Below, one piece after another: positions 24,919 to 55,100 of a DNA stretch of 64,000 bases (within the stretch, counting starts at the first letter, position 1; each line of letters begins with the position of its first letter). The stretch covers positions 7,688,001 to 7,752,000 of the forward strand of contig NC_134480.1 in assembly GCF_964194025.1 (NCBI RefSeq), written 5' to 3'. This stretch comes from Convolutriloba macropyga (Eukaryota). The translations under genes and the position numbers were made by a program. The notes beneath the pieces were generated by a model, which searched no databases, was not told the DNA's origin, and saw only the letters and a program-made list of their open reading frames with translations.

Positions 24919-25929
24919 AAAATGGCGTCAAATTGGACCCACAAGAGAGACGAATTGATGCAAACGTAAAACTGTTTAAATAAAAAATGTTCTTTATTTT
25001 TTTCATCTCATGGAGGACTTCTATAAGTTCAAAGATCTCTACCTCCAATTTTTTTGTTTACATATAGTGAAAACTTGTGCTTTTTATTTTCTGCGTCATT
25101 CTTTTGGGCAAATGAATGGATCGTTTTTCTGAATGAATGCAAATATTTTTTTCATAAAAAATTTTAATCTTTCATGAAAATGAAAGTTTTTCAGAGAAAA
25201 TTATCCAAAGAAAATTATCCAGAAAGTTTCCAAAGTGCATACTTCGAAGTTTAAATATCCCCATATCAGAAGTTATTTAAAGACTGAATTTCAAAGAAAA
25301 TTTTCTTGTCATCAAGCTGTTGTAATTCTTTGCTCCTAACTCAAGTTCCCGAAAAACGAAGACATTATCAATATTTAATCTAGACAGCTGCCTCGGCTGA
25401 TGCTATCAAAATTTCACTTTGATGCAAATCCAAATAGGAAAAACCATTCATTCAACCAGACGCAAAAACAATTTTTCATTCTAAAAAATGCTTCCGTGGT
25501 ATAAGTAGGGTCATTAAAAAGTTTTTTGCTGACAGGATGTTCACTTGAGAAATTTCATAGATTTGCTGAATAAAATTTTATTATTAAGGTTTTTCTTATC
25601 AATTCAACCAATCTGCACAACTTTGAAGTTCCTGTCGTCAAATATTTAAAGACCATTCACTCCGAATGCTTGCCAGAATTTTTGTCTTTTTGTGTGAAGG
25701 GAAATTAAGCTGATCCTCTATAATTTCAGTCATATTATTTTCTGTAATATATTTATCCATAACAATAGAATCACCGCTGTCATAGAAGTTTAATTAATGA
25801 GAAGTTCCCATCATGATTATATTCAGTTTGAAAAATAAACAAAAGTTTGTTGTTCACTAATCAGTTTAATTAAAATAAACTTTTTTTAAAAAAATGCTTA
25901 AGAATTGTATCAAAAAGATTTCCCGTGCA

Positions 25930-26263
25930 ATGATGAAAATATCTAATTTCCGTCAATTTACCTTAACCAGTGTTATTATAACAAACTTTGCGGTTTTATT
26001 ATCCGGTGCATCCTTTATTTTGCAAACAAAACGTGACTTGTTTTCGATTAATGAAAATATCCTAGAGCCTAATTACGTTTTATGGTCTAAAAACGCAAAA
26101 ATTTGTTTCAAAGAATGCTCAAAAAACCTACCAAACGCGACAATGTTAGTGTCTGCCTTTTCCGAAGACTCCCAAAAGTGTAATTGTTACAGTAGTAAGA
26201 GAGAAAAGCTGATTGATTTCTCGAAAGCAGAGAAAAACACAAGACGTTCATGGATCTATTCAA
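25930..26263 (+). CDS. First coding exon of a secreted mosaic protein: signal peptide and PAN/apple-like Cys domain
   Basis: Hydrophobic N-terminus (FTLTSVIITNFAVLLSGAS), Cys pattern ICFKECS..SAFSEDSQKCNCY, strong donor A|GTGAGT at 26264 (phase 1). Alternative ATG at 25894. Confidence 0.6.
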
Positions 26264-26409
26264 GTGAGTTTCTCTAACTGTGCATTTAATAAATCTCTTT
26301 GTTTAGTCTTCTCGTTTGATGGTGGTCATTCAAGCCGATAGGCAAGCACGCCGAATTTTGAAAATGAGGTCCAGTAATCCATAAAATTTTGAAATACCCG
26401 TATTTTAAG

Positions 26410-26540
26410 TTGACCTTGGCGGGCCGGTGGGCGCGCTTCGCCGCGATAACTGGCCCGCGGTTTCCGGATAACATCTCATAGCGGATGAGAGGCATGGCCA
26501 TGGACAGCCGTCCGCTGAGACCCGTACCCACTAGATGTAT
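26410..26540. other. GC-rich island forming two long hairpins (unidentified structured element)
   Basis: GCGGGCCGGT..ACTGGCCCGC stem with GCTTCGC apex (GCGAAGC on minus), then TCTCATAGCGGATG..CGTCCGCTGAGA stem. Sharp GC contrast with the flanks. Confidence 0.55.
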
Positions 26541-27222
26541 AAAAATTGACGTATTTTTGTTTCTTGGGTGCATTGGAATACATTATGCACTATAATACTA
26601 CGCAAAGTATTGATTGTAACGACTAAAAATGTGTTATTTTTGATAGATTACATAACTATTACATATGTTTCGGCTTGCTTTTCTGTCGGCTTACTTTTAC
26701 TTCGGCTTCCTTTGCGTTCTCCTTCTCGTTTATATATATGGTAACTTATTTAGCTATGTTAATACCTATAGAGTGAATAATATTTACTATGAAATTCATA
26801 GATTTTATTGTATTCACATGTTCATTGATAATCGACGGACTACCGGATTTTAAAATTGGTCCAAAAACATTAGAATGGTCTGGTGTTTAAAGGAAAAATC
26901 TCAAGACCCATAATTTGTTTTGTAAGAGGGTTGGTGACCGTTTCTAAAATTTGTGGTTAATTGTCCTTTCGTTCTGAAGACATTGATTATGAGTTCAATT
27001 TTACGAAATGTAATTATTTTTTCCACATTTCTTTTGTCCAAATATTTTTAGGATAATCAGATCACATTTCTGAAATCAACCATGAATTAAAAAAAAATTC
27101 TGGAGAAAAACAAAACCTGGCATTGTCTTCTTATAGGTCTTTTTCGTGAGATGAAGACAATAGATCACACTGGTCCCGCTCTATTTGAGATAATGACCAA
27201 TGCCTTGTCTTTTTTTCTTCAG

Positions 27223-27600
27223 GTCTTTCAAACACCTTTGCTTGCAAAAAATCTCTATCTTAACTGAGTAGGGAGGCATTTAACTTCATCACAACCTTAT
27301 AAATTGAGACGGTGTTTGCAATACTACATGAACAAATATGTGAACGGAGTGCTTTAAAAACAGGAAATTCAATTTTTGAAAAGCTAATTAGACTGTTTTT
27401 GAACAAGGTGGAGGTCATACTGGTTTCCATCTATAAATCAACATAAGTTCACTGGAAATTAGTAACCCATTGATGAATAAGAGATACGTCATAGCAATGA
27501 AAAAACTCAACACGGTCTGAAAAAAATTGTAATGAAAACGATAATTCACAACAAGCCCACAAAAAACGAAGACATCATCAACTGTTTAGAGTAACTTAAT
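27223..27600 (+). pseudogene. Decayed C-type-lectin-like exon
   Basis: After acceptor ttttttcttcag: RCLQYYMN.. then GGH(frameshift)LVSIYKS.. with stops. Resembles a CTLD N-terminal half. Confidence 0.35.
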
Positions 27601-28417
27601 TCAAAGAAACAACTCTTATCGGCCTAATTGAATGAACAATTATATCAATGGTACAGTCAATACATCTTTTTGTATATTGTTTGCTTGTTACTGTAGCGCA
27701 AAAAAAACAATATTCAAAGTTCTTTTTGGATCAGCCAAGCAACTATCAGAGATAGTGTACTAATAATACAAGATGATTAGCAAAAAAATGTAAATAAAGC
27801 GTTACTGATTAATCGACCGATTTATTATAAAGTTGCTTTCGTCCACAGATAACAACCTTTGGTTGAAAGCCTAACTGGGCTTATAAAAAGGCATATTTAC
27901 TTGTTCATAGAAACCCATGAAACGAAAATTTTGCTCAAATATGGGAAAAAAATCGCACGTTTACTCAAAAAAGCAACATTGGGGCTAGAATTTAAACCCT
28001 TTTCTAGTATTTTAGTGATGTTTAGCAAATTTAGTTTCTCGATTTCGTGCCAGTGATGAGAAAAAAAATCTGTCCAAACAATTACTTTTTCATTGTTTTT
28101 CAGTTGCCAAACGTTAATATGACCGTTTTCTATACAATCTTTCATATAACAAGATTTGGAGCTTGCTATATTCAATGCGCATGTTTCAGGCGAGATGGGC
28201 CCAATGACAGAAGTTGAAGGTGAGTGGAAATTTTTCAGTAATCTCGAGCATGAAGTCTTATTAAACGTACAATAGAAAAAAAGATTCCCTGAAAACTATA
28301 AATCGGATTTCAGGGAAGAGGTCCCTTTTCCCATTGAAAAACATATTTAAGATCCGGTCACCCTAGATAATTGGTCGTGGAATACTTTTAAACACATTCT
28401 TGACACATCGAGAGCGA

Positions 28418-29050
28418 CCCTAGTGATGAAAAAATTTAAAATCTTGCAAGAATCTTGCAAGAAATCTTGCAAGGAATGCATAGTTCTTCCTTTTTTCTTG
28501 AAAGATTCTTGCAAGATTTGCATCCATCTTGCAACAGACTTGCAAGATTTTGAATCCATCTTGCAAGAATCTTACAAGATTTTAAATTTACATTTACCTT
28601 TTTGTCCTGGTTACCTGGCTGCTTTTTTGCTGTTGGTTGAGCTGAAATAGTTAATCAACTGTCGGAAAATCTTCTGAAGTCAAGTTAAAACCTGACTTTT
28701 TTGAGATTTTCCAGTATGGTTCTGGTGGTTCTTTCCTCCTCCTTTTTCTTTCCGAGCTTTGGACTGAAAAAACTATAGCAGTACTGATATAGTACGGTAA
28801 AAAAAACCGCACTTACACAGTTTTCCAAAACAAACAACGACAAAAACTAGACGAAGTAAATCACTAAATATAAGGTTTTGTAATTTGTTCAATAAAAAAT
28901 AATTTGCTTTAAAGATCTTTCCTAAAACATTTGTACCCCGATTTATTCTTTTGCCTTGATTGATATCTTGCAAGATTCTTGCAAGAATCTTGCAAGTTTT
29001 GAATCATCTTGCAAGATTCTTGCAAGAGTTGAATCCGCTCGTCACTAGGG
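28418..29050. mobile_element. MITE with CCCTAGTGA TIRs, 2-bp (GA) TSD and TCTTGCAAGA subterminal arrays
   Basis: GA|CCCTAGTGATGA ... TCGTCACTAGGG|GA. Many copies of the palindrome TCTTGCAAGA at both ends. Confidence 0.8.
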
Positions 29051-29310
29051 GAGAAGCCGATTTGTGCCAACTATTACTTATCAAAAAAATATTTGAAAAC
29101 ATACTAAAAAGCATTATCTTCCTGGTTAGAGAATAAGCTTTTGCCGAGTATTCAGCACAAAAAATGCTTCTCACTCGCTGTATCCCACAGAATTTTGCGC
29201 TTTAATTTTTAAAAAAAAATTAAGTCTACTATTTTTTATACTTTATTTTTCTTAGTCTAATCGGTGACTTTATCCTTTTAGATATATCGTCTCAACAAGT
29301 TATTTCATAG

Positions 29311-29568
29311 ATGCCATTTTGGGGTGTACTTTTGCTCACTATTTGCCAGGTAACAGATGATAGTTTATGATTTATGACAATGTTGAGCTTCGAAACCATA
29401 CCAAAGACCAAAAAATCTGCTTTCGAAGATGGCAAATCCAAGATAACCAAATGTTTTCAGACTTCTAGGATACATAGAAATCATAGAATGGGAGTTAATG
29501 ATATCGCTGTCACAGGGAATCATAGAAAAAGTTATACAGGACAATTTCATTCTGTGTAGATAAGCTAG
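29311..29568 (+). pseudogene. Decayed C-type-lectin-like exon
   Basis: Acceptor tttcatag|AT. One frame reads DAILGCTFAHYLPGNR**FMIYDNVELRNHTKDQKICF..YRCHRES*KKLYRTISFCVDKL with many stops. Donor G|GTGAAT. Confidence 0.4.
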
Positions 29569-30080
29569 GTGAATGATAGACAGAAAAACAAGCGGCTTTT
29601 TTCGCTTGCACCTTTATCTCTGCCGCTTTAGAGTAGTAATTATCAAATCAGGGTGCTAAAAACGTTTTATGAAGTGAAAACAAAAGCGATAGGGGGGTTC
29701 AAACAATTAGGAGCTAAATAAAAGCAATATTGGCCAGTAAATTCCGTTATCCGAAGAAATGCCAACACGTACAAAGCAACGCTCATACACGGACCCTGTT
29801 TTAACTGTTTTTGAGCACACGTATTCTGATAAACACAAAATTTTGCTGGTGATTAATCAAGTTGTCAGTTATACATTTTGTTCTGAACCATTTTATAGTT
29901 TTGTTTAGATTTCAGATCCTGTGAACACTGGATACCCTAATTACTAAAATTTAACCACAGCAACGTAACGAGTTATAATTATCTGGTGCAACTATAACGG
30001 GCACCAAAAGTCAATATTAAGCTTTTTTATCATAGCTTTCAATGAAAACAGTTTTGATCAATAACTTGCTTCGATTTTAG

Positions 30081-30197
30081 ATCCGTGCGAAACTGGGCAT
30101 CATTTCTGCAGTGACCTGGCTACCTGTTCGTTCAACGGAAAAAAATATTTCTGTTTGTGTCCGCCGCACTTAAATGGAAACGGATTGTTCTGCACAA
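30081..30197 (+). CDS. EGF-domain exon (phase 1-1) of the mosaic protein
   Basis: attttag|AT..CACAA|gtgagt. 117 nt encoding DPCETGHHFCSDLATCSFNGKKYFCLCPPHLNGNGLFCT, with six Cys in EGF spacing. Confidence 0.85.
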
Positions 30198-30206
30198 GTG
30201 AGTGCC

Positions 30207-30707
30207 NNNNNNNNNNNNNNNNNNNNNNNNNNNNNNNNNNNNNNNNNNNNNNNNNNNNNNNNNNNNNNNNNNNNNNNNNNNNNNNNNNNNNNNNNNNNNN
30301 NNNNNNNNNNNNNNNNNNNNNNNNNNNNNNNNNNNNNNNNNNNNNNNNNNNNNNNNNNNNNNNNNNNNNNNNNNNNNNNNNNNNNNNNNNNNNNNNNNNN
30401 NNNNNNNNNNNNNNNNNNNNNNNNNNNNNNNNNNNNNNNNNNNNNNNNNNNNNNNNNNNNNNNNNNNNNNNNNNNNNNNNNNNNNNNNNNNNNNNNNNNN
30501 NNNNNNNNNNNNNNNNNNNNNNNNNNNNNNNNNNNNNNNNNNNNNNNNNNNNNNNNNNNNNNNNNNNNNNNNNNNNNNNNNNNNNNNNNNNNNNNNNNNN
30601 NNNNNNNNNNNNNNNNNNNNNNNNNNNNNNNNNNNNNNNNNNNNNNNNNNNNNNNNNNNNNNNNNNNNNNNNNNNNNNNNNNNNNNNNNNNNNNNNNNNN
30701 NNNNNNN
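30207..30707. other. Assembly gap (N run)
   Basis: 501 Ns. Confidence 1.
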
Positions 30708-32292
30708 TTGCAATCAGAGTGGTCTCCATTATTAAATAATATTGGTTTATCTTGATTAAAAATCAAATGTTGCTGATTATTTCTTATCGCCAATCTTGAT
30801 GTTTTCTCTGATCTTTGATGACTCTTCCTCTCTCCCTCAGCCTTTTAACTCTCGTTTTCTCCTTCCTCGATTTATTGAACTTGAAATGAGCACAAGTTCC
30901 CTCCTGTTGGATGACATTGCTGAAGAAAAGGCTCCCATCTCATTGGATGAGTTCAATAATGATTCTGGGCGTGTTTCTAACTTCTCAAGAGATTGATTCA
31001 GTTCAGCAAAAGCGAATAGGAATAGTTACCTTCACTTTGCGTCCCACTTAATCGGGTCGCTAATTAACAGACAATTTCAACTACGGAGTTCGCAAGAACA
31101 GCGTAGTAGCCGATCCTCGTATGATGACAACAGAAATTGATTGAACTGCTCTATCGAAGGCAATGAATGTCCCCTTGACTGATAGTTTCTGCTATCAGCT
31201 AAAAAGAAATGCGAAGTAAGTTCTTCTTCAGAGTCTTCGAGAGACCGCCCAAAACTTCGATTGCCAGAGGGACGAACGAAATTTCTTGTTGAGCTTAGTG
31301 GATATATTTGGTGGATTTTGCCCGATAAACTCAAACAGAAAACTTGTCAATCCAAATGGAGGATTTTGAAAATTTTTGTCCGTTCTTCTCGTCTGTCAGT
31401 TAGTGTAGGGAAATAATATGTTTTGTCTGGCGTTTTTCGATTCAGTTTTTGCTTCAGATAATATTTTTTTTGCTGCTGAATCGTTTGTAAGTGACAGTGC
31501 AATTTGATCTTATCAGAAAATTGGTCATAGATAAAATATTTAGCCTAGGAATAAACGTATGTGAGAAGTTTCCAAAATTTCCGTCCATTTTCAATTCAAA
31601 TCATGCAAGATAACCCTTTTCCAAGTAGTTCTTGCTTATAGTTGTTTCTAACGCTATAGCTTAAGTCAAAGTTTTTCTATATGCCAAAAACAGAGAAGCA
31701 ATATAAAATTGAAGCAGAAAAAACTCTATTTTTTTCTAACCGACTTTATTATTGTGGCTACTCTGAAGTTAATTTTGTCAGATTGATTTCTCAATTTTAA
31801 ATCAAATTAAAGAAACAGAGCAGTTCACTACCGAACCCCTTCCATAGCAACTAGAGCAAAACAGCCAAAGTTGAACGAATTAGAAAAACTCGGGCGGAAA
31901 AATCTTAGTTGATCGTACAACAATATTTTTCCGGATCACAGTTTCTTAGTCTTCTTAGAAGAATAATGTTTGGTATTAACGTGGTCGATAACACGGGTCA
32001 AAACAATTCAGTATGTTAAATTTTAAAATAAATTTGGAACTGAAAATATACAAAATTTCGCTCGTACTTAAAATAGTTGTTTATAAAAAATATACAGAGA
32101 AAAACTACATTAGCTGAAAAACATTTTTCTTGATTGACATATGAATAGATGTTAGTTTTTAATCCCGGAGTTGATTTTGTATTTTCTGCAACATTTCATG
32201 AGAATCATATGTGGCCTAGATACAATCTAGCTCATTAGTTGGAAGTCATTGGCTGTAAGAATTAGGTTTCTATTGATGGGAGAATTAACTTT

Positions 32293-34010
32293 TGATATAT
32301 GGTTGATGAACCAATAAGATAAGGATAACGCCAAACAAAATTAGAATCGAGTTTGTTGTGTGGCCAATACTTATCGACATAGCAGAAAAACTCGTCAGAT
32401 AAGTGTTTCTTTCGTACTTTGAAACTTTAATACTATAACTTCGAATTTTTCGATATTTCTTTGAAACCATCACATACTGCCTCCTTTTTAAGCAAGTTTG
32501 TGGGTATAGGTTCTCCAAGTCTGTCAAATTGTTTTCTTTTTCTTGTTGATGATCGCCAAGGTTCTGATGATTCAGGTTGTTGTTGCTCTGCAGCTGATGT
32601 AGCTGCAGAAGCTTTGTTTTGATATGAAGGTCCCACATCTGTGCGCTGAACTGTGGCTCTGATTGGTATATTGTCTGCTCCACTAGTGGTTCAGTTTTCT
32701 CATTGTCCTCATCCAGTATTGGAAATTGGTTGTCGCTCACTAGGATAGTCTTAGTTGAGGTTTCGAGTTTTATGAGAGATATGTTCAAGCTCTTCCTGCT
32801 GATAAAATTTACAGGAACTTTGGTCTTGAATAAAATGGGTTTCAAAGTCTGCTTTTGCTTGTAGTCTCACTCTGCGTCCCAATAGAAGTTCAACTGGAGT
32901 TTTGCTCTCAATGCAACGATACCCAGGTTGAGGTGGCCAGACCAAATTGAGCTCTGATCAGACCATCTTCGAGCGCACACATGTTCTCGGTGCGCTCGAA
33001 TTACAGTGTCTGGAAAAGGCTTCGAGCGCACTGTTGTCTGGACAATGGTCTTGGAACTTGCCTGATCAGAGGCTACTTTGGTCTGGAACGGTCTGAACAG
33101 TGGTCAATCTGGTCTGGGACGGTCAGGTCAGAGGCATTTTCGAGCGCACACTAGTCTGATCAGAGGCTTATTGGAGCGCACACTAGTCTGACCATAGACC
33201 AAGTCGAGCAAATTTTTTTTCAAGTTTTTTTACTGATATTTTTTGTCTATGGTAAGAGTCAACAAGAAAGCAGCTTGCTGATCAGAACTCCATCTAAAAA
33301 TCTGATGGGTTTGATCAGAACCAAGGGGTCCAGCTGATAGCAACTTCCCTTCGACAAAAGATTTTGAATCTAAGTAGATCAAGACGTTTTCATGCAAAGC
33401 TGTCTAAGTTCATTTATTCAGTTAAAAACATAAAAAATGGCATGCTCAATAAATTTATTTGAGAATTTTTTTGATTTTGTTTTCTTTAGCAATACTTTTA
33501 GAATAGGCTTTTCGTTAGTTGAAGATTGAAAACATCAATTTTCATGAGATGAATATATTACAACGAGAGATTTGTTTATGTTCAAAATCATTCTCTGATC
33601 AGACTATTTTGAACGCACTTTAGTCTAAAAAGAGGCAACTTCGAGCGCACTTTTGTCTGATCATAGGCAATTTCGAGCGCACTTCATTCTGATCAGAGGC
33701 TATATCGAGCGCACTTCAATCTGATCAGTTGCGGATTCGAGGGCACACTAGTCTGATCAGGGTATGACTTTCGAGCTCACAATAGTCTGATCAGAGGAGC
33801 TTTTTGAGCGCATTTTAAGCGCACACTGAGCTTCGAGCGCTCTATAGTCTAATCAGAGGACACTTCAGTCTGGGTCGGTCTGATCAGAGGTCGCTTTTGT
33901 CTGGGACGGTCTGATCAGAAGCCATTTTGGTCTGGACCTCAACCTGGGTAGCAACTGCCGGCTTTCAGGGCACCGAAATCAGCCAAAACGTGCACCAAAC
34001 ATGAGCTCAT
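32293..34010 (-). mobile_element. Gypsy-type LTR retrotransposon 3' remnant (integrase tail, PPT, 3' LTR), interrupted by a MITE
   Basis: KTPVELLLGRRVR and WRSSTRKRKQFDRL motifs typical of the Ty3/Gypsy pol C-terminus. PPT AAAAAGGAGGCAG, then a candidate LTR TGTGATGG..ATATCA (32474-32293). Confidence 0.65.
32922..33948. mobile_element. MITE with CCCAGGTTGAGGT TIRs, TA TSD and TCTGATCAGA/TCGAGCGCAC subterminal arrays
   Basis: TA|CCCAGGTTGAGGT ... ACCTCAACCTGGG|TA. ~30-bp tandem units at both ends. Confidence 0.88.
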
Positions 34011-34189
34011 GTTTTTGTAGCTTTGAAAGATTAATGTTTGCTTCGCCAGATCTTAAAAAAATATCTTATCATAAGAATCGTGCCAGATCTTATAGAAAAG
34101 CCGTCCAGTTTTAACGAGTCCTTATGAAAATATCAATTAATCTGAATATAGGGCCATAATTGATATATTTATAAATTTTTCAAAAATTC

Positions 34190-34550
34190 TGATAAGCGAG
34201 GATTTGCATTGGACGAATAAAAAGTGGCGAATTCTTGGTGTTGATTTATATAAATGAATCCAAATAAAAATTGATGAAAAAAATGATCAAAAAAGACAGG
34301 CGATGGTTAAGAAATTCTATAGGTAAGTCAGTTATTTTCAAGAATAACAAAATCTAAGCTACGAATTTGAGAAGTTTGGTCTCCGTTAGTACCGGATTAC
34401 ATTAAACAGTTCATGAGAGTTATGACCACTAATATCAGCTCACTAATATGCCCATATCCAGCCCAAAAATTTAGCCTTATGGTTGCGGCACCGATTATGA
34501 TATAAACTACAGCTATAAACTAATTTGTTTCTGGGCAACAACGTAATTCA
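34190..34550 (+). pseudogene. Decayed C-type-lectin-like segments
   Basis: ICIGRIKSGEFLVLIYINESK*KLMKK.. and ..STGLH*..YGCGTDYDINYSYKLICFW with in-frame stops. Confidence 0.3.
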
Positions 34551-34663
34551 TGCATAACTTTGGGTTTATTTTTCATTCAGCTGGCGGGAATGGTGATAGA
34601 TAACTGCCTTTCCATTAATTTCGTTTGTAATGGCTTTACAGTATTTTTTATCACTTGTTTCAG

Positions 34664-34726
34664 GCTACCAACGACTGGACATCGGAAACAGGGCTGTGAT
34701 TTCATCTACCAACGCCCACATTTCAG
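34664..34726 (+). CDS. Phase 1-1 exon: start of an F-type lectin / galactose-binding-like domain
   Basis: ttgtttcag|GC..TCAG|gttaa. 63 nt encoding YQRLDIGNRAVISSTNAHIS, which joins in frame to the exon at 35356. Confidence 0.55.
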
Positions 34727-34909
34727 GTTAAATGACCTTTTTCGAGAGATCTATATCACGTTTCATATTGCACAAATCCAAGGTCAAAAGGTCAACAGTT
34801 GGGCGAACTTTTGTCAATTGCAGCTAAAGAGCCCTCATGATTTAATTGTGTTATTGTCAGCAAAATCTTGACTCACAAAAAGTGGTTAAAGTAGCGCATA
34901 AATCCGCTA

Positions 34910-35215
34910 CCCGTGTTGAGGACAACGACGAAAAAACGACAATCTTTTGGTAAGAAATCGTTGTTTTCGTCGTTTTGTCGTCATTTTAGCCGTTTTGTCG
35001 TAGTTTTCTTCGTTTTCATTAATTTCCGTTGTTTAAATCGTCTTTTGCGTGTAAGAAATTATCGTTTTTTCGTCGTTTTTTGTCGTTTCTTACGCCGTTT
35101 TCATCAAATAAAATAGTCATTTTTTGATCGTTTTTTTTGTCCTTTCTTACGTCGTTTTTTTTTCGTTTCCTACGACGATTTCTTATAAGTGAAAAACAAA
35201 ATTCCTCAACACAGG
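34910..35215. mobile_element. MITE with CCCGTGTTGAGG TIRs, TA TSD and GTCGTTTT arrays
   Basis: TA|CCCGTGTTGAGG ... CCTCAACACAGG|TA. Confidence 0.82.
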
Positions 35216-35355
35216 TAACCTGGGCTAGCCGCTGAGTTTTTTTTTACCGAAACTTCGATGAAATGAAGACGTCTAATAAACTTGAGATACTATTTCAAAT
35301 CAGGTCGAAAAACGTCAATTCTTTTCGTAATGTATGATGAAGCTACAAATTTTAG

Positions 35356-35526
35356 GTCCTATCAGCACCCTTCATGACCTCAATGTGGGCATGAGTCCAT
35401 GGAGTGGTCACTGCTTGTCCATTTCAAGTACGAACTCTGGACAAATTTGGGAAATCAGAATTGAGTTTGAAGAGCGTCATTACGTCAAAGCTGTCGGAAT
35501 CTTCAACGATATCAGTCGATATAGTG
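35356..35526 (+). CDS. Exon encoding the core of an F-type lectin (fucolectin)/F5-8C-like domain
   Basis: aattttag|GT. Reads GPISTLHDLNVGMSPWSGHCLSISSTNSGQIWEIRIEFEERHYVKAVGIFNDISRYS, similar to the FTP pattern (A.DG....C.H......W..D......V..V.I.N). The donor position is uncertain. Confidence 0.55.
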
Positions 35527-37463
35527 GTGCGAAATTTTGATAGCCATTTCTTCAATGTGATGAGCGATACCAAGTTTTAGATTACAGGTCGAATCGATCT
35601 CTGATGCGAAAATCCGCAAGGGAAAACCACGTAAATCTTACATATCGGCTCACAAATTCTGATCTTAGATCATTTTGATCTGATCATAAAAATTCTTTAA
35701 TATCAATACTTTAATACTTTAATCTGAATTTTGCGAAAATCCGAAAATCCAAGCAAAGGGAAGACATGATGAAACCCACAATTGTATGATAGAACAGACG
35801 TAAATGTTCACACCTCGATATAATAAATGTGCGCAGACGTCACAATTTTTGTGATTTTTTTAGTAGAGTGCGAGGAGGTTTCAGTTTTGGTGAAGATTTC
35901 TGTTGATGAAGTTGAGACGCGTTAGTTTGGGCAAAATATTTGGAAGTGAAAAATGATTTTTCCGACAAAACATTCCGCAATTTCAGCTTGCCTTATCCCA
36001 GAAATCTTATTCTCTTCAGATCAGTTCTAACTTTTAAGCCACATGTGAAAAAATGTGCTTTTTTTACATCGAAAAAAATTCTGGACAATTTTTTTCTCAT
36101 AACTTTCAGACCTGTTCTCCAACTTTTTAGTCGTTTCCTGATCTTATGCCATTCAGTTAGTACTAACAACTAAACCAACAAATCAACCGCTCTGTGTCGA
36201 ACGAGATTCAGCTCTAAACGTAAAAGCAGGGATGGAGCGAAAACTCGACGAATCTCTGAGACGTAGGAATAGTAAAATATCGCAGTAGGAACTACGCAGC
36301 CTGGAATAAGGTAGCACGATTGAGAGACAAGTTGATGTGCTCGCAAGAACAACTGAGATCTTAATAGGCGATTCGTCAAACTCTTTTTTTCGTACCGGTT
36401 GTCCAGCACATCGAGCTGCTAGAAATGCAGAGAAGAACAAGAGACTGAAGCGTCAATTAGTACTATATTTCTCTTCAAGAAATCGTTGGCGCTCTGTTTC
36501 TGTCTCGAGAACGGTTGAGCGTTTTGACAACAGAATTATCAATTCAATGTTATTGCCATTATATTGATTCTTGAGATAAATTGGTAGAGTGTCGAAACTT
36601 TAGCAAAAAAACATGTTCATTTAAACCAATGGTGTCTGTTGAGTGCCTAATCGAGTTTCAATTGGCACCTTTTTGGATAACCTGTCCAATGGAACTTACC
36701 AATCGGCACTTAGGTGGTCTGTAGAGTATCTAATCGAGTTTCAACTTGCACCAGAACAAAACCTTGTTGAAAAACAATTTGAGAAAAAAAACTGTGTGAA
36801 TATAAATCACATTCAACTACGCTAAAAGCGTTAGGTATTACAAGATTTTTTCCATTCTCTTGATTATTAAAACTCCACTGTTTTTCAAACTTACGTGATT
36901 TACTTCATGAATCATTTTTTGTTTCAAATTCATCTCTTAGGTAGGAAGTTTCTGAATTTATATATTTTTCTTTTTTAGTCTAAATAATTTAAACTCTTAG
37001 TAAAAAAACAAGGTGAAACAAAAAGTTGGGAGTTTAAGCACCAAACAGGAGACATTATATGACAACCTAGAACCACTTGCTGAAGAGAAAAATTTCGAAA
37101 TTATTGTCCTAAATAATCAATTCCACTTGAAAAAAATTCTGTCAAATTGTTGTGCGAGAGTACTTGTGAAAAATTTTTCAGCAAGATGAATTTAGGGAAT
37201 GTATATTGAATTTTGCATCTAACACTTCCCTGGTTAAGCAAGAATTGAAAATTTACGAGATTCTTGCAAGATTATAAATTCTCTTGGAAAACAATACTGT
37301 CACTTTTTGAGAAACTAAAATTGAAAAACAAAATACTTCAGTTTGAAAAAAAACTTCACAACCAAATTTTGCTACACCGTTTTTGTCAAAATTTTTTAGT
37401 GTACATAAATTGCTAATTTGCTATTTAGCTAATTTGCTAATTTGCCAACACGCTATTTTGCTA

Positions 37464-37663
37464 NNNNNNNNNNNNNNNNNNNNNNNNNNNNNNNNNNNNN
37501 NNNNNNNNNNNNNNNNNNNNNNNNNNNNNNNNNNNNNNNNNNNNNNNNNNNNNNNNNNNNNNNNNNNNNNNNNNNNNNNNNNNNNNNNNNNNNNNNNNNN
37601 NNNNNNNNNNNNNNNNNNNNNNNNNNNNNNNNNNNNNNNNNNNNNNNNNNNNNNNNNNNNNNN
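37464..37663. other. Assembly gap (N run), preceded by an AATTTGCT-type simple repeat
   Basis: 200 Ns. 37405-37463 is a short tandem repeat. Confidence 1.
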
Positions 37664-37795
37664 CGAGAGGGGCTTTACGTGATTTGCGTTACTTTGTCTG
37701 AAATACTAACTCTTTCACACTATAGAGGTCTAGTGTTTGAAAACTTTTACGTTTGCTTCATTTTTTTTAAAGAGCTTCCCATCGTTCCATTTTAG

Positions 37796-38052
37796 GGGGT
37801 GGTGACGAGATATGCACCAGTAATTATTCAAACTCCGCCAGTCTCGACGGACAATGTACATTTCTCACGGCAACCAATCTCTCCAAATTTGAGTTCGACG
37901 TTAACATCATTGTCACAGGATCCAATGGAAAAACCAAGGAATCTGTTTCCACTCTCAGGAGTCAAATAGTGTTGCGTCGTTTTTTCCCTTCCATTACAGC
38001 TCATCGGTATAACGTTGCGATACCTAAAATTTGCTCAAAACGTGCACGTTGA
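37796..38052 (+). CDS. Candidate terminal exon of the mosaic protein
   Basis: ccattttag|GG opens a phase-1 frame of ~85 codons (GGDEICTSNYSNSASLDGQCTFL..) ending in TGA at 38050-38052. Confidence 0.35.
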
Positions 38053-38700
38053 GGTCTTTAAGGACAGAATGAACATATAGGCCAACACTTAATTATAGAG
38101 GTCTTCCTAATAATTTAAGAGACCTCTGAGAAACTAAATTACGTTAAAAGCTGGTTTGCAGTTGCTCTTTTTAGTCTGCACGTAGAATTGCGAGGTCTAT
38201 CGCTGCACTTTTTTTTACAAATTGGATTCTTTCGATTAGGCATAGCTGACACGTTGCTAAGAGCAATTTTTGAAAACTGTGACAAATGCGAGAGTTGAAA
38301 TACTTGAGCAAATGTATTGCTCTGAAACTATCTATTAATTGGACCACCAAAGGCGCATACTATACGGGGGGGGGGGTGTTGGTAACATTTTTTTGAAAAT
38401 TTTTGAGGAGGTGCCATTGCAACCCAGGTGCAGGCCTCAATTTATAAAAATGAAATAAAAGACGCTAAAAGTGAAACCGTAACAAATAGAACTCTGGCAT
38501 CAGAATTATTGTTCAGAGAATTATTGTATCAGAGATCCAAATCCGTAACACGGACTTGGATCTCTCTGTTCTCTTTTTAAACAACTAGTGCTTTGTCATT
38601 TGTAGGTAGTCTATCCAAATCATACACCATGGGTTTACTTGTGACTCTGGCAACTTATATTCTCAGCGCCGTTTTAATTGAAGTTTTCATTCGAGGTCCC

Positions 38701-38841
38701 GGATCTATTCTGTTTGCCCCCCCCCCCCCAGCTTAGTGGGCTTATATTTTTTACGCCCCCCAGGAGCACGTGCTATTTTTTTTACATAGTAACGTGCTAT
38801 ATTGGGGGCTAAAACACTGAGGGGGGGGACAGAATAGGTCC
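38701..38841 (+). mobile_element. Short MITE with GGATCTATTCTGT TIRs and C/G runs (second copy 40493-40654)
   Basis: GGATCTATTCTGT..ACAGAATAG(G/A)TCC, flanked by an imperfect GAGGTCCC-like duplication. Confidence 0.7.
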
Positions 38842-39130
38842 GAAGGTCCCTAATGCCCGATAGAGTCAGTTAGTAGTTTAGAGATAGGAAACTTTACTTT
38901 GCATAAATTAGTAGCTCTCTCTATACCATCTTAAAGGCTGAAAAAGAACACTTCGGGCGTCTTCTCTAACTGTTGCCACCAGCGATTTCAGAAATTCTAA
39001 CCATAAAAACTCGCCAGTAGTCAACTCGAAACAAATTGACTACTCCGTTTTATATATAAACCGTCAGACGAACGAGCTAAAATTAATAAATGCCAGGATG
39101 CTTTTCTCAAAATAACATTTCTTCAAAATA

Positions 39131-39336
39131 CCCGGGTTGACGTCATAATTGAAAAAGTTATAAAATTACAACTTCCTATTATGTCTATGAAAAGTTGTAA
39201 TCCTAAAACTTCCATATTATGAAAGTTGTAAATTAACAAATTTTCAGAGAAATGAACACGGCTAAAACAAAGCACAAATGACATTAAGGATCCATAAGAG
39301 GAAAGTTCTAGGATAGCAACTTTTGGTTAACCCGGG
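39131..39336. mobile_element. MITE with CCCGGGTT TIRs and TA TSD (duplicate at 40943-41151)
   Basis: TA|CCCGGGTTGAC ... GTTAACCCGGG|TA. Internal AAAGTTGTAA/TTACAACTT repeats. Confidence 0.75.
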
Positions 39337-42300: not shown

Positions 42301-43109
42301 CCTGGAGGTAGTTTTTCAACTCTCATAAACCATCTTAACCAAAGGTAATTTCACTTTTACATCGAATTAGTTGTCACAGTTGTGTCCATTTTAAAACTCA
42401 ACCTGATAATTTTAATACAGACTCTCAAACACGGGGGCACCGACCAACAAATAAAGCAGGCAACAGCAAAAAAACTTTTTTAAACACATACTCACCTTAG
42501 CACAACAGATACTAAAACAATATAATTACATTATAACAAAGTTTTTATTAATTCCTCGTGAGATCAGAAATAAACTAGTGATTTATGCGTTCATTAGAGC
42601 GCTGGATTCTGATGTAGTCCAAATAGCGTAACAAACAGACGAAAAAAAAAACAAAACATAAATCTGCAAATGTTGAACCTCACCTTTCATTTGCATAATT
42701 ATCAGGAAAGATTTACAAAGAAGATATAACACACATTGATCGAAACAGATACAAAATGAACAGCTTAAGCAAACACGTATACAAAATTTCTTTTAAATAT
42801 CTTTTGAAAAAAGAAAATGACGCTCCCGCAGCTTTTGCCAAAATTGTGCAAGATTGTCCCCTTTAGAAAAACAGCTTTCAATCAAGCCATATCTTTGACA
42901 TATTGCACCAAGAGCAATAGACGCGAGAGCAATGTTTCCAGTTGGTGAATTACATAGAGTAGATTTATACAAAGAAATGATACAATTGATTCGAAAAACA
43001 AAATTGAAACTTTTAAGCAACTTGACAGGCCTGAATTACGTTATCCAAGAACAAAAAACACCAAATAACTCAATTGCAGTTATAAGAACTCTATTTGATC
43101 AAACGTACT

Positions 43110-46100: not shown

Positions 46101-47250
46101 TTATTGTTTTCACTCTCCCAACTACTCTTTACTCTTTTTTTGCTAATCCAACATTGCCCTCAAAATCTTGATCGGATATAGATCAAAATTCTACAGCGTT
46201 ACAGACTCCGTTGCCTGTTGGTGGCTGTGCTGTAGGACGACGAAAAGGTGTGTCATTGTAATTGAGTACTAAAAATGATTTATAGAAGTAGGTTAGCGCA
46301 TGTCTTATAAGATACCAATGTTAAAAAAAAAACACCCAGCAAAAAAAGTATAGTCAATTAAACAAAACTAGAAATTGGTGTTCGGTTTGATTCCGGTAGC
46401 ATTTTTGACAAAATTGGAAGCAGGACACTGATATTGACCCAGCGTTCTTCTGCAGCAGTTATGCACGCAGAAAAGGCCAACAGCCTCCTTGGATAATGTA
46501 CTCGAACCTTTATTTTGGTTCTTTTAACATCAATTTATTTGATTTTCGAATAAACTTGCATCTCACGGAAGCACACAGCAGCCAATTGGAAGATAAAGAG
46601 TTGTTTAGGCTGACCCGTTCTCAGCTATACTAATCAGTCCCGGTTCCCCAACAACACTGGTAGACAGTTGAACATCCACACTCTTTAATGCTCCCCGCAA
46701 CTACTTTAATGCTCCACTGAAAAACTACACAATTTGAGCACTCCACGATTGAATTCCCCCAATCAGATAACAACCTCTTGACTCCTTAGATGGAGTCTAT
46801 CACCCAGCTACAGAGGCCTTTCTCTCCATAGTGGAAGTCTCCCAATCAGCTACACAATCTGTTCACTCTTGCTCTTTTTAACGAGCTGCGAACTCCTTTC
46901 TCTTGGCCATTTCTTGATTGTGTCTCCTTGTCCTATTTGCCTTTCTCACCATTGATTTCAGCATTCCTGTATTATAGCGCAGAGGCTCAACAACAATGTT
47001 TTTATTTACGAGGTGGGAGGGGTTGATTATTTATCTTAAAAGAAACCCGGACCCATAATCTAATTTTTACTGGAAACGCAGAGAAAAATCCTGCAGTCGA
47101 TTGTTTTAATTAAAATTGATAGCTAACAACAGTGGTAAAAAGCACAACTTTCAGCGCCTATTATAAGCCTATTTAGATGTCAATATACCGCAATTGTACA
47201 TTCCTAGTAAATATTTTTATTTTAAAATTTCTTGATTTCTAATGACATCC
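43110..47250 (-). mobile_element. Old Ty1/copia LTR retrotransposon with both LTRs and a heavily mutated gag-pol
   Basis: RNase H YTDWAGN..RKSISGYCF..STAEAE; RT-like TYSPT..MDIGAAYLNAAIEEEI..LKQSGR. PPT AGGAGGAG then TGTTG at 43290. Copia-type start GATTATGGGTCC at ~47060. ~47065-47160 aligns with ~43110-43205 (diverged LTRs). Confidence 0.85.
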
Positions 47251-47730: not shown

Positions 47731-48035
47731 TTAACTCATTCATTTTTGTCTATCATCGAAGTTAAAAGTTTAGATTACCTTTACCATTTAGAGGCAGTAT
47801 AATGATCAAAACCCATCATCAATTCATCAGCTTCTTCGATATATTATATCGACTTCGCACTTTAGTGATAGATAATGAATGTATTAACTCATTCATTTTT
47901 GTCTATCATCGAAGTTAAAAGTTTAGATTACCTTTACCATTTAGAGGCAGTATAATGATCAAAACCCATCATCAATTCATCAGCTTCTTCGATATATTAT
48001 ATCGACTTCGCACTTTAGTGATAGATAATGAATGT
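47731..48035 (+). repeat. Perfect 154-bp tandem duplication
   Basis: 47731-47884 is repeated at 47885-48035. Confidence 0.95.
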
Positions 48036-52140: not shown

Positions 52141-55100
52141 AGATCTCTTTTTAAATCGTATATTTTTTCAGCAAAGATCTGTAATATTTGGTCAGCGATC
52201 TTGCATAATTTTCTACATGAAATTGTATTATTTTATTGAGTATTTTGTGATATTGACATAACTGCTAAGTTCAATTCATGAATGAATTTCTTACGAACAG
52301 TATAATGATACTTCCCGAGTCCAAAAATATTTTAGAAAAAAATTGAGGTAAGTGGTAACAAGTGTTTAGAAGAACATTCAATATTGTTTTTTTTTTCAAA
52401 AAAACTTTACGATGAAAACAGCAAAAAGCTTACAAATTGTGCAACATAAACGCTGAATCGGGTATAAGGTCAATGCTAAAACCCATTAAAAACGGTAAAC
52501 ATCAACACTATATTGATTTTTTAGGATCCAAGTTATAACGTGGTGAAGTTTATTTTTCAACGAATTAATGGCTATTCTTATATATTTTTTTAGACAATTT
52601 TTAGCATTCACACCGCCGCTCGAGTTGAGAGTCATTTAGGGCTGAAGAAATACCAACGTGAAGAGTTAAGAATTGAAGAGTAAAAAAAGTTTCACTTTTT
52701 GTTCATCTGATTGGAATCAAATTTTTAAACCAGCAAACCGACTCTCCATATGCGTTGGTGTTTTCGCCACCTGTGCCCGAATTCCTTGGATGTATTGGTT
52801 ACAGACCACACACGAGTACACCGTCGGAGATTTATTGCTTAGCGACATGGAAGAAGCCGGCATTAATCTCCAATTTTTACGGCTTGTTGAAGACAACTTC
52901 TGGTGGAAAAACGTCGCACTTGAAAGGTAGAAACTATGATTTTACATTACTGTGTTCTGAATTGCTCGGTTTGACGTGAAAAGTAATAGGTTTTTTTTTG
53001 TTTATAGAAGAGAACGGCATTAGTAGGAGCGAGACGAGATTTTTATCTTTTCGAAACTGACAGATCCCCGCTCAAAAAATCTGTATCATAAAAGTCTATG
53101 ACACGAATTGCTATCTTGTAGAAGAACGTATATCTTGTGAGAGTCTGTCAGAAAATATTGCAGAGCAATACTCCTTCTCACGTTCACCAACTGAAAACCA
53201 TTTTTCAACTAAAACCATCGTTTTATTGATACATAACATTAATATGCATATACAATCTTCAATTAATTTTACAAAGCCGATGAAGATTTTGTGTAATCTC
53301 CAAAATGACTAAAAGTAACTGATGTTGAATTAGATTCACGGATTCCACAATTTTGGTTCAGCTTGTTAGATGAATAAGAAAAAATATTATGAAAGTGAAG
53401 TGCTGTAAATAAACTTAGCAATTTTAAATTAGCCAAAGTTGATAATCAGAAAACTGCTTCATATATTAACAAAAAGAAAAAAACTGGGAAAATTCCTCGC
53501 GGATTAAAATAATACCCTCGAAGAACTAGTTAAAATAAAAAAAAGAAAATAGGGGGAAAATATTACAACAATCAAAAAAACAAAAAGGTTCAGAAAATTT
53601 AGAACTTTTTGATCATTTCACAGAACCGTTAAATAAACAAACAGATAACGGATGACACAAAAGGTATAAGCAAATAAAACGAAATCTATTGGGTACAGAA
53701 ATACTAAAATTGGTAATTCGATAGCATAGATATTTAATGTTCTTTTTTAATAATGATATGGGTATATAGTAGTAGAATTAATTGACAACGAAATTTTGGT
53801 ATATATATATCTTAGTTGGACAATTGAATCTTGGGCAATCATGCAAAGAATCAGTCAAACTCATTGGGCAGCATATCACTCCTTTGGACATTTCCCGTTC
53901 TTCATCAATTGGAATCTATCGTATTTTGGAGAGTTTTGAAACACAAATCTAATTGGTTTATACAGGTCTTCCCGCTCACCCAATAATGAGAAATGAGAAA
54001 AGAAAATAATAGCCGATTGGAAAAATTTTTCAAGCAGTTTTAACGAAAACGCTGTTGATTATCTCCATGAGTCAACTGAAAAGAAGTTCAAATTGATTTC
54101 TATTTTTGACTAAAGAATTTTCTAAGTTTGTTCCTAAACAAGATTTTTGAACAAAATATGAGACATAAGAAAGACACATGAGATAATAAGAAACATGATG
54201 ACTTTTTAAAACTTAATTTAAATCTGAACGAAAAGATGATGCATAGATTAGTAGAGCATGAGTGACTAAAACTGTAAAAAAAGTTTTCCAAAGGAATTGA
54301 CAACAGTAGAAGGTACTGTTCGCAAATGGATCAAAGAAGCTGCTCTACTGTGTCTTTTTATGAAGTTTTAAGTTTATGAAGATCATTACAAAAAATAGAT
54401 CAACTAGGCTTACTAGCTTTTGATACAAAAACTGGCCAATATCAATTGTAAAATTGACTGTTTATCAGGTCAAATGAAGTATTAGGACATATGAAAATAA
54501 GCAATGGACATATCAACGGTTTTGTTTTTTTTAATAACGGAAAGAAACAAAACTTAGAAAATATCCATTAGAAAATCTGTTTCGCAGAGGAGGCAACAAA
54601 AAAACCAACAAAACAACAACAACAATCTAATTTGAAAAGATAAAACATTCTATATTACCTTCTTTTAGAAGTTATCTCTGAGTAAAAAAAATAGCGATGA
54701 AAAATGTCGCTACAGAATTGAAGATTGCGCATAATCTCATACATAAAATTTAAATGTAAATAAATTTGAGCATTCAAAAAAATTATTTCCAAGCATTGCT
54801 CGAGAAAGGTTCCTTTCTGACGGGAGTAAAGTCTTCTTTAATAAAAGTCATCTTAAACATTAATTTAATATATTATGTTGAATCGTATTAAGCTTATAGT
54901 GTGTCTTCACAGCTGCTTTCAAAAAGAGATTAAACAAATCACTTTTACATATTATCGTTCAACCAATGTTTATCGGCGCTAATGAATAAACTTATCCATT
55001 GATGCTATCACAACATACATTAGTAACAGTGTTCACTGTACTACAAAATTAACAAATGTAAATGTATGAATTTCACTCGAAATCCAACCAATGAAAATGT

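What the first reader, a model, noticed from the sequence alone, without database searches (positions are those of the whole stretch)
25930..38052. Mosaic secreted lectin gene that may have shed its C-type lectin domains by exon decay
Seen: a chain of open exons with canonical or near-canonical splice sites, all joined in phase 1. They are 25930-26263 (signal peptide + PAN/apple-like), an optional 30-nt exon 28190-28219, 30081-30197 (EGF), 34664-34726 + 35356-35526 (F-type-lectin-like) and possibly 37796-38052. Between them lie three same-strand segments (27223-27600, 29311-29568, 34190-34550) with CTLD-like Cys/motif patterns but many stops. There is also a degraded copy of the EGF exon start at 29916. 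Established: symmetric phase-1 exons can be skipped without a frameshift, which underlies exon shuffling in extracellular proteins. Inference: this is a PAN-CTL-CTL-EGF-CTL-FTL pattern-recognition or adhesion gene whose CTL modules died while the others stayed in frame. The ORF track largely misses it. Two gaps may hide more exons.
Basis: partly seen in the sequence, partly recalled or inferred. Interest (0 to 1): 0.7.

Follow-up and report, generated by a model that had tools for sequence, protein, structure and literature searches.

The report
Acoel mosaic gene; no lectin relics
The chain of small exons is a real, already annotated but uncharacterised gene of the acoel worm Convolutriloba macropyga. 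It encodes a secreted apple-domain/EGF mosaic protein from a family seen only in this worm's genome, and the supposed dead C-type lectin exons are ordinary intron; the part really missing sits at an assembly gap.

Summary
**Exons: real.** A paralog on contig C860 matches them exon for exon. About ten other loci keep the same order. They are also exons of RefSeq model XP_075260599.1 (LOC142352112, Convolutriloba macropyga).

**Domains.** Exon 1 models as a PAN/apple fold. Exon 3 is EGF_3.

**CTLD relics: not supported.** The three segments are unique intron. Their stop and Cys densities equal intron background. They give no Lectin_C signal and are not conserved in paralogs. No paralog examined has a CTLD there.

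**"F-lectin-like" exons.** They open a divergent domain that is possibly galactose-binding-like. This is a lead only; no HMM recognises it.

**What is really missing.** A full-length paralog (XP_075247820.1, 1283 aa) has about 670 residues with no counterpart in the window. They belong between 35526 and 37796, where the 200-N gap lies. Every exon whose boundaries I read there is phase 1-1, so the frame closes whatever is missing. Hidden exons and a true deletion cannot be told apart here.

**Extent.** The gene continues to 52926 and past the window.

**Verdict.** An ordinary gene; the exon-decay story fails.

The parts
25894..26263 (+). Exon 1: start codon (25894 in RefSeq, or 25930), signal-peptide-like hydrophobic stretch, then a PAN/apple-fold domain with 4 invariant Cys; donor A|GTGAGT, phase 1
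   Evidence: - Open frame.
- 18 hits at E<1e-3 in the own genome, self included.
- Family alignment A3.
- AF2 model with pLDDT 72, core 80-89.
- Fold matches are almost all apple/PAN.
- 100% match to RefSeq protein P0007 aa 1-125.
28190..28219 (+). Exon 2: 30-nt phase 1-1 microexon (linker); probably constitutive rather than optional
   Evidence: - Same 30-nt exon with the same splice sites in paralog C860; 6 of 9 whole codons identical.
- Included in RefSeq model P0007.
30081..30197 (+). Exon 3: EGF domain, 6 Cys, phase 1-1; donor GTGAGT lies 4 nt before assembly gap 1
   Evidence: - Pfam EGF_3 E 4.2e-7, 30.5 bits, above the cut-off.
- 92% identical in amino acids to C860, with pN 0.049 against pS 0.73.
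29901..29931 (+). Short degenerate copy of the EGF exon's acceptor and first 16 nt, 165 nt upstream; not coding
   Evidence: Local alignment score 16 against a maximum of 13 in 2000 natural-intron controls; stops follow at once.
30207..30707 (.). Assembly gap 1 (501 N), inside the intron between exons 3 and 4
   Evidence: - The EGF exon is complete to its left.
- Gap-free paralog C860 and RefSeq paralog P0011 pass from EGF straight to the next exon.
- Some paralogs have two EGF exons, so a hidden exon cannot be excluded.
- Letters not looked up.
34664..34726 (+). Exon 4: 63-nt phase 1-1 exon, start of the first beta-rich (galactose-binding-like?) domain
   Evidence: Same length and the same CAG|GTTAA donor in C860; in RefSeq P0007.
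35356..35526 (+). Exon 5: 171-nt phase 1-1 exon, middle of that domain (family motif DLNVG ... C ... PW ... VKAVGI)
   Evidence: - 18 own-genome matches.
- Conserved acceptor, donor and phase in 9 paralogs.
- Alignment A1.
- pN 0.24 against pS 0.60 versus C860.
35864..35920 (+). 57-nt phase 1-1 exon used only by the RefSeq model; doubtful
   Evidence: Maps to P0007 aa 251-270. It has no counterpart in any fetched paralog locus.
37464..37663 (.). Assembly gap 2 (200 N), at the place where paralogs carry the exons for about 670 residues
   Evidence: - P0011 aa 235-907 have no match anywhere in the window.
- The middle exons of paralog contig C3009 have none either.
- In paralogs the corresponding interval is 19-56 kb.
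- Letters not looked up.
37796..37968 (+). Exon 6: first half of the GG.DE...CTF...TG.NG module; acceptor TTTTAG|G in phase 1. The 3' end is unresolved: 37944 or 37968 (both phase 0, from homology) or 38006 (RefSeq)
   Evidence: - Seven own-genome matches, self included.
- Alignment A2.
- Comparison with C3009 and with ORF fragment P0002.
- RefSeq mapping.
52734..52926 (+). Exon 7: second half of that module (PY...P.F.GC...C..W). The acceptor AG|CAAAC is shared with C3009, while RefSeq starts the exon at 52805. Donor G|GTAGAA, phase 1, leads to exons beyond the window
   Evidence: - tblastn with paralog exons.
- Same split in C3009.
- A2 tiling.
- RefSeq tail exons at C13:7753064-7753156 and 7759609-7759782. 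By my reading of the two printed sequences they resemble P0011's following exons; this was not aligned with a tool.

Best explanation
**What it is.** The finding covers the 5' part of one large gene, LOC142352112 of the acoel Convolutriloba macropyga.
- The gene belongs to a family with about 16 other loci in this genome, some of them clustered on scaffold C12. No relative was found in other organisms.
- As read from paralog XP_075247820.1, the family protein contains, in order:
  - a signal peptide;
  - a PAN/apple-fold domain;
  - a short linker;
  - one EGF domain;
  - two divergent beta-rich domains that may be galactose-binding-like;
  - a long beta-rich stretch coded by one 1.3-kb exon;
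  - further Cys-bearing modules.
- Each exon boundary I read in the domain-coding part is phase 1-1.

**What the window holds.**
- The window has the exons for the signal/apple domain, the linker, EGF and the first two thirds of the first beta-rich domain.
- A 200-N gap follows. After it come the exons of the GG.DE module, which this subfamily splits by a 14.8-kb repeat-filled intron.
- The gene then runs on past the window.

**The CTLD relics.** The sequence between the exons is ordinary intron with MITE-like and tandem repeats. It contains no decayed C-type lectin exons.

**What is missing.** About 670 residues of family architecture are absent at the gap.
- I put about 60% on these exons lying in unassembled sequence.
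- I put about 30-35% on this copy truly lacking them, as the 462-aa RefSeq model assumes.

**Function (inferred, not shown).** A secreted extracellular binding or adhesion protein, possibly glycan-binding.
For: **Species and annotation**
- G000 has 1,175,981,408 bases in 4694 scaffolds, the figures of the published assembly (PMC13650328).
- The exon-1 ORF clusters with XP_075260599.1 of C. macropyga.

**One gene, real exons**
- Collinear exon-only conservation with C860, with identical exon lengths and splice sites.
- The same exon order recurs at many loci.
- pN is below pS in every exon: EGF 0.049 against 0.73.
- The RefSeq model uses the same exons.

**Domains**
- EGF_3.
- PAN/apple fold.

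**No CTLD**; the segments are unique in the genome.

**Family architecture and the missing middle**
- P0011 sequence and exon map.
- Window matches only for P0011 aa 25-110, 119-158, 175-234, 908-968 and 957-1013.
- C3009 keeps the middle exons and the window holds none of them.

**Restricted to this lineage**
- A profile search of 1.84 billion representatives with the GG.DE module found one 83-aa exon-like fragment and only marginal bacterial repeat proteins.
- Word searches and PDB searches found nothing.
Against: - No RNA evidence could be obtained. All four listed runs hold 85-90% of a mostly intronic stretch, so they are DNA. Expression and every junction are therefore inferred from conservation and from the RefSeq model, whose own evidence I cannot see.
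- The RefSeq model joins the two sides of gap 2 through a 57-nt exon, giving a 462-aa protein. If reads support that, the short form is real.
- The donor of exon 6 is weak under the homology-based model (GTTTCC or GTGTTG). RefSeq uses other sites (38006 to 52805), which skip a Cys-bearing segment conserved in the family.
- The galactose-binding-like reading rests on a sub-threshold language-model look-up and on motifs. Pfam, PDB and hhalign see nothing.
- My own-genome CTLD HMM loses power beyond about 10-20% decay, so a very old loss of a CTLD cannot be formally excluded.
Confidence: 0.8

Rival explanations
1. This copy is truly shortened. An internal deletion removed the end of the first beta-rich domain, the second one and the 1.3-kb exon. 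Because the exons are phase 1-1, the frame stayed open. The gene then makes the 462-aa protein of the RefSeq model, or is a young pseudogene.
For: - RefSeq XP_075260599.1 joins 35526 to 37796 through a 57-nt exon.
- All remaining exons are open.
- The assembled distance is only 2.3 kb, against 19-56 kb in paralogs.
Against: - The missing part coincides exactly with an assembly gap of unknown size.
- The left flank ends in a simple repeat.
- Paralog contig C860 also breaks off in this same intron.
- The 57-nt exon has no family counterpart.
- A first beta-rich domain lacking its last third would probably not fold (inference).
Confidence: 0.32
2. One reading: a PAN-CTL-CTL-EGF-CTL-FTL gene whose three C-type lectin exons decayed in place at 27223-27600, 29311-29568 and 34190-34550 while the others stayed in frame.
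For: - Phase 1-1 exons do permit such a loss.
- True PAN_1 + Lectin_C proteins exist elsewhere in this genome (L021, L026, L027).
- My HMM cannot see relics more than about 20% decayed.
Against: - Stop and Cys densities equal intron background.
- No Lectin_C signal by Pfam on the stop-free pieces, by tblastn with nine own CTLDs or by an own-genome HMM read through stops as X.
- The segments are not conserved with any paralog.
- C860 introns are only about 600 nt.
- No family locus holds a CTLD.
- The PAN-CTLD genes are single-exon, and their PAN profile shows no relation to exon 1.
Confidence: 0.03
3. The whole locus is a decaying pseudogene whose exons happen still to be open.
For: No RNA holder was listed. 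The architecture looks incomplete, and exon 6 has a weak donor.
Against: - Seven exons are open with intact GT-AG sites.
- pN is well below pS against a paralog at saturated synonymous divergence.
- NCBI models it as protein-coding.
- A recent death cannot be excluded by these tests.
Confidence: 0.1

Closest known systems
XP_075247820.1 (LOC142340926, C. macropyga, 1283 aa) and the other paralogs of this family
   Same: - Same exon order and phases.
- Exon 1 is 36% identical, EGF 62% and exon 5 43%; the GG.DE module is shared.
- By my reading of the two sequences, the following tail exons are shared too.
   Different: - The window copy has no counterpart of aa 235-907.
- Its GG.DE exon is split by a 14.8-kb phase-0 intron. 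The same split is seen in C3009; five other paralogs have a single exon.
PAN/apple domains (factor XI and prekallikrein apple domains, HGF N domain, plasminogen PAp, Toxoplasma MIC4, Sarcocystis SML-2)
   Same: The predicted fold of exon 1 residues 27-111 matches them: Z 6.9-4.5, rmsd 2.4-3.5 A over 64-79 residues. They make up nearly the whole top-50 list.
   Different: - No PAN_1 or PAN_4 HMM match.
- No profile similarity to this genome's own PAN_1 domains.
- Only four invariant Cys.
- Z under 8 is not decisive by the tool's own note.
F-type lectin / F5/8 type C (galactose-binding-like) domains
   Same: - General pattern of exons 4-5, and the paralog's closing CEVEIFG motif.
- The nearest language-model clusters carry PF00754 or PF22633, at scores 0.89-0.86.
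   Different: - No HMM match in single exons, in either full RefSeq protein or in a genome scan.
- hhalign against this genome's own discoidin domain gives probability 1%.
- The fucose-binding His/Arg motif (recalled from memory) is not evident.
- The fold could not be tested.
PAN_1 + Lectin_C proteins of the same genome (loci L021, L026, L027)
   Different: They are a different family. They are coded in single exons, have true PAN_1 and Lectin_C matches, and show no detectable similarity to this gene.

Membership tests
C-type lectin-like domain (Pfam Lectin_C, PF00059) | HMM match to the about 110-residue CTLD | tested here: not met
   - The genome-wide PF00059 scan lists no hit in the window or in any family locus.
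- Pfam on the ten longest stop-free pieces of the three segments finds nothing at E<=10.
- RefSeq proteins P0007 and P0011 have no Lectin_C.
C-type lectin-like domain (Pfam Lectin_C, PF00059) | Residual similarity of the intron segments to real CTLDs of the same genome | tested here: not met
   - tblastn with nine own CTLD frames: best E is 0.59 anywhere in the window, and no hit falls in the segments.
- Own-genome HMM on frames read through stops as X: nothing.
- Power is limited to relics less than about 10-20% decayed.
EGF domain (Pfam EGF_3) | HMM match above the curated cut-off, and six Cys | tested here: met
   30.5 bits against a cut-off of 28.5, full profile length 1-36. Six Cys are present in the 38-residue translation.
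PAN/apple domain | Sequence-profile match (PAN_1 / PAN_4) | tested here: not met
   No PAN family at E<=10. hhalign of family alignment A3 against this genome's PAN_1 domains gives probability 0.1%.
PAN/apple domain | Fold: beta-sheet packed on one helix | tested here: met
   AF2 model with pLDDT 72 and strand-helix-strand order. Foldseek and VIA-align lists are dominated by apple/PAN structures, Z up to 6.9 over 72 residues. This is a predicted model with middling Z.
F-type lectin / F5_F8_type_C_2 (PF22633) | HMM match | tested here: not met
   No match for single exons, in the own-genome scan, or in the full RefSeq proteins P0007 and P0011.
F-type lectin / F5_F8_type_C_2 (PF22633) | Jelly-roll fold of the whole domain | not testable with these tools
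- Only a sub-threshold language-model lead exists.
LOC142352112 / LOC142340926 family of C. macropyga | Collinear homologous exons with the same phases | tested here: met

The most novel reading that the evidence does not exclude
The family is a previously undescribed, Convolutriloba-restricted set of large secreted recognition proteins. Its two orphan beta-rich domains would be extremely divergent galactose-binding-type lectin domains. It would have expanded in tandem in a photosymbiotic animal reported to lack major immune signalling pathways (PMC12849515). The window copy would be a naturally shortened member that lost about 670 residues of phase 1-1 exons without breaking frame.
Probability: 0.15. 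Interest if true: 0.5.

Novelty: new member of a known kind. Interest (0 to 1): 0.22.

Why it matters
For the scan, this corrects a tempting story. Cys-and-motif patterns in AT-rich introns are chance. An open chain of phase 1-1 exons across an assembly gap says nothing about whether a gene is complete.

For acoel biology, the locus points to an uncharacterised gene family of about 16 further loci, coding large secreted apple-EGF-beta-rich proteins. No relatives were detected among 1.84 billion protein representatives. Such a family could be a candidate for extracellular recognition in a photosymbiotic worm. Nothing here shows that function.

Tried and rejected
- **Pfam on single exons.** Only EGF_3 matched. 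Pfam on paralog open frames found nothing.
- **PF22633 own-genome scan.** It hit only a BTB-type protein with discoidin domains and unrelated loci. hhalign of exon-5 alignment A1 against that domain gave probability 1%.
- **PDB sequence searches.** Searches with A1, P0007 and P0011 found nothing.
- **Word searches.** Exon 1 found only itself. P0007 and P0011 aa 157-475 found nothing. The full-length RefSeq proteins sit in clusters represented by short exon ORFs, which hides them from length-limited searches.
- **Structure of the GG.DE module.** AF2 gave pLDDT 52, which is unusable, so no fold search was run on it. The first protein-atlas call had no usable hit.
- **RNA evidence.** Only DNA-like holders were listed. 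I did not use read laying, because it could only have shown DNA and might have exposed gap letters.
- **A reading I dropped.** I first took the paralogs' single GG.DE exon for a terminal exon, because conservation stops there. P0011 shows further exons follow.
- **Repeat, not exon.** A tblastx match at 48213-48293 to paralog introns lies among tandem repeats and breaks the exon order, so I treat it as a repeat.
- I never joined the exons into a protein. All full-length evidence comes from public proteins returned by the listing of cluster members.

Full report
**Organism and locus**

The window is G000:C13:7688001-7752000. G000 has 1,175,981,408 bases in 4694 scaffolds. The published Convolutriloba macropyga assembly txConMacr16.3 has exactly these figures: 1 175.98 Mb, 4 694 scaffolds and 6 645 gaps (PMC13650328). 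The exon-1 ORF also clusters with a RefSeq protein of that species.

The window is AT-rich, at 28-39% G+C. The finding holds two N runs, at 30207-30707 and 37464-37663.

**The exons are real**

All are bounded by AG and GT.
- The four internal exons measure 30, 117, 63 and 171 nt, so all are symmetric in phase 1.
- Each exon has paralogous copies in the genome:
  - 18 hits for exon 1 at E<1e-3, self included;
  - 18 matches for exon 5;
  - many for the EGF exon.
- The copies lie in the same order (exon 1, EGF, exon 5, GG.DE exon) at loci on C12 (29.2 Mb and a cluster at 36.1-37.3 Mb), C6, C9, C11, C1 and C7, and on small contigs.
- Contig C860 (16.2 kb, no N) carries the closest 5' paralog. 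tblastx between it and 20-42 kb of the window gives collinear blocks at exactly the five exons and nowhere else in the gene.
- The 30-nt microexon, the 117-nt EGF exon and the 63-nt exon have the same lengths and nearly the same splice sites there. The microexon is therefore probably constitutive.
- Nine paralogs of exon 5 keep the same acceptor, donor and phase.
- By the Nei-Gojobori method against C860, synonymous sites are near saturation while non-synonymous change is lower in every exon:
  - EGF: pN 0.049 against pS 0.73;
  - exon 1: 0.34 against 0.61;
  - exon 5: 0.24 against 0.60.

**What the modules are**

- Exon 3 is an EGF_3 domain, above Pfam's cut-off.
- Exon 1 gives no PAN profile match. 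It also shows no profile-profile similarity to the true PAN_1 domains of this genome.
- An AlphaFold model built from the eight-sequence family alignment has pLDDT 72, with 80-89 in the core, and a strand-helix-strand layout.
- Foldseek's best matches to that model are apple/PAN structures, at probability 0.9-0.98 but E only 0.05-0.5.
- A VIA-align second look gives Z 6.9-4.5 and rmsd 2.4-3.5 A over 64-79 residues. Nearly all 50 rows are apple/PAN domains.
- I accept a PAN/apple fold as likely. The signal peptide is inferred from the N-terminal hydrophobic helix only.

**The supposed CTLD relics**

- In every + frame the three segments carry 3-13 stops.
- Their best-frame stop density is 3.5-6.7 per 100 codons, which is not lower than the gene's other intron sequence (mean 3.9).
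- Their Cys density is 2.4-4.7 per 100 codons, inside the background range, whose 95th percentile is 5.9.
- A genome-wide scan with Lectin_C finds ten good CTLDs elsewhere and none in the window or in any family locus.
- tblastn with nine of those CTLD frames gives nothing better than E 0.59 in the window and nothing in the segments.
- An HMM built from them, run on six frames read through stops as X, finds nothing in 24-40 kb, in the whole window or in 17 paralog loci.
- Pfam finds no Lectin_C in the ten longest stop-free pieces.
- The segments are single-copy in the genome and are not conserved with C860, whose introns are only about 600 nt.
- One honest limit: a held-out CTLD scores only about 20 bits with my HMM and disappears after 10-20% simulated decay. 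A very ancient loss cannot be disproved.
- The genome does hold PAN_1 + Lectin_C proteins (L021, L026, L027). They are single-exon genes of another family.

**The public gene models**

The cluster look-up returned two public proteins.

P0007 = XP_075260599.1, 'uncharacterized protein LOC142352112', 462 aa, is the RefSeq model of this very gene.
- It adds a 57-nt exon at 35864-35920.
- It continues with 37796-38006 and 52805-52926.
- It ends with two exons beyond the window, at C13:7753064-7753156 and 7759609-7759782.

P0011 = XP_075247820.1, 1283 aa, is the model of the paralog at C6:30.9 Mb. Its order is:
- signal and apple domain, then a linker, then EGF;
- a first beta-rich domain in three phase 1-1 exons, the last of about 229 nt ending in a CEVEIFG motif;
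- a second similar domain;
- a 1.3-kb exon with a weak fn3 hit;
- the GG.DE module as a single exon;
- at least three more exons within the stretch I fetched.

**What is really missing, and the gaps**

- tblastn of P0011 on the window matches aa 25-110, 119-158, 175-234, 908-968 and 957-1013. Nothing matches aa 235-907.
- Contig C3009 carries the closest paralog of the 3' part. It keeps the exons for aa 317-907, and none of them has a counterpart anywhere in the window.
- The missing exons belong between exon 5 (ends 35526) and exon 6 (starts 37796). That interval is 19-56 kb in paralogs, but 2.3 kb here and interrupted by the 200-N gap.
- The left flank of the gap ends in a simple repeat. C860 also breaks off inside this same intron.
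- Every exon whose boundaries I could read in this region is phase 1-1, so exon 5 and exon 6 join in frame however many exons lie between them. The frame tells nothing about continuity.
- I rate hidden exons at about 60% and a real deletion at about 30-35%. I did not look up gap letters.
- Gap 1 is harmless for the model:
  - the EGF exon and its GTGAGT donor are complete 4 nt before it;
  - C860 and P0011 pass from EGF straight to the next exon;
  - some paralogs carry two EGF exons, so a hidden extra exon cannot be excluded.

**The 3' part**

- Homology of the 37796 exon to paralogs covers about 50-58 residues. The rest of the paralogs' single exon lies at 52734-52926.
- C3009 has the same split and the same AG|CAAAC acceptor. 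Five other paralogs have one undivided exon.
- The 14.8-kb intron is full of a 1.8-kb tandem duplication and satellites.
- The donor is unresolved:
  - 37944 (TCT|GTTTCC) fits the paralogs' spacing best;
  - 37968 (ATA|GTGTTG) ends the block that can be aligned with C3009;
  - RefSeq uses 38006 to 52805, which drops a segment holding a Cys conserved in the family.

**Is it a lectin?**

- No F-type lectin or F5/8-C HMM matches the single exons, the own-genome scan or either full RefSeq protein.
- PDB sequence searches and hhalign are blank.
- The protein-atlas look-up on P0007 aa 172-381 lists F5/8-type-C and galactose-binding clusters first, at 0.89-0.86. That is under the tool's 0.9 line.
- Taken with the motifs, this is a lead and not a membership.
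- The profile search of 1.84 billion representatives with the GG.DE module found one 83-aa exon-like ORF and only marginal bacterial repeat proteins. The module looks restricted to this lineage.

**Expression**

No RNA holder was listed. The four runs hold 85-90% of a mostly intronic stretch, so they are DNA. The genome note says a poly(A) RNA-seq run exists. Expression and all junctions remain inferred.

**Verdict**

This is a real, already annotated but uncharacterised gene of a lineage-specific mosaic family. The CTLD exon-decay idea is not supported. The only 'shed' part sits at an assembly gap.

Noticed in passing
window 37796-37968 and 52734-52926; C3009 (L047 8646-8485 and 4946-4860); L052-L056: One module is a single exon in five paralogs. 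In the window gene and in C3009 it is split by a phase-0 intron, 14.8 kb long here and about 3.5 kb in C3009. This is an intron gain or loss inside the family; its direction is unknown.
   Followed up: partly
window 38006 and 52805 (RefSeq junction) versus 52734-52804: The RefSeq model XP_075260599.1 skips a segment that is conserved in all paralogs and holds a family-conserved Cys. It includes about 20 non-conserved residues instead. This may be a mis-modelled junction or an alternative form.
   Followed up: partly
window 28420-29045 and 32900-33950: The introns hold MITE-like elements. One has inverted arrays of a TCTTGCAAG motif. The other is a foldback with 32-nt tandem units, and pieces of it also occur on C860 and C3009.
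   Followed up: partly
window 38391-42000 and 47731-51000: There is a 1.8-kb tandem duplication, 93-99% identical and carrying identical 75-aa ORFs at 39412 and 41227. Satellites with periods of about 129-130, 145-147, 153 and 32 nt fill the large intron.
   Followed up: no
window 10186-10908 (-): A single-exon ORF of 241 aa has Thioredoxin and Glutaredoxin domains (Grx3/PICOT type); it is an upstream neighbour on the opposite strand.
   Followed up: partly
window 15520-15936 and 16138-16515 (-): Two adjacent open frames of 139 and 126 aa look by eye like parts of one gene. Pfam finds nothing at E<=0.01.
   Followed up: partly
loci L021, L026, L027 (C5:47.57 Mb, C1307, C5:61.80 Mb): These are single-exon genes coding PAN_1 followed by Lectin_C, with WSxWS-like stretches between. 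They are the true PAN-CTLD proteins of this genome and are unrelated to the finding.
   Followed up: partly
window 5251-5532 and 6001-6282 (-): Two identical 93-aa ORFs lie 750 nt apart, which indicates a tandem repeat upstream of the gene.
   Followed up: no
C1:34439519 and 34442256; C9:19825250 and 19828472: Some family members carry two EGF exons or two exon-5-like exons, so module number varies within the family.
   Followed up: no
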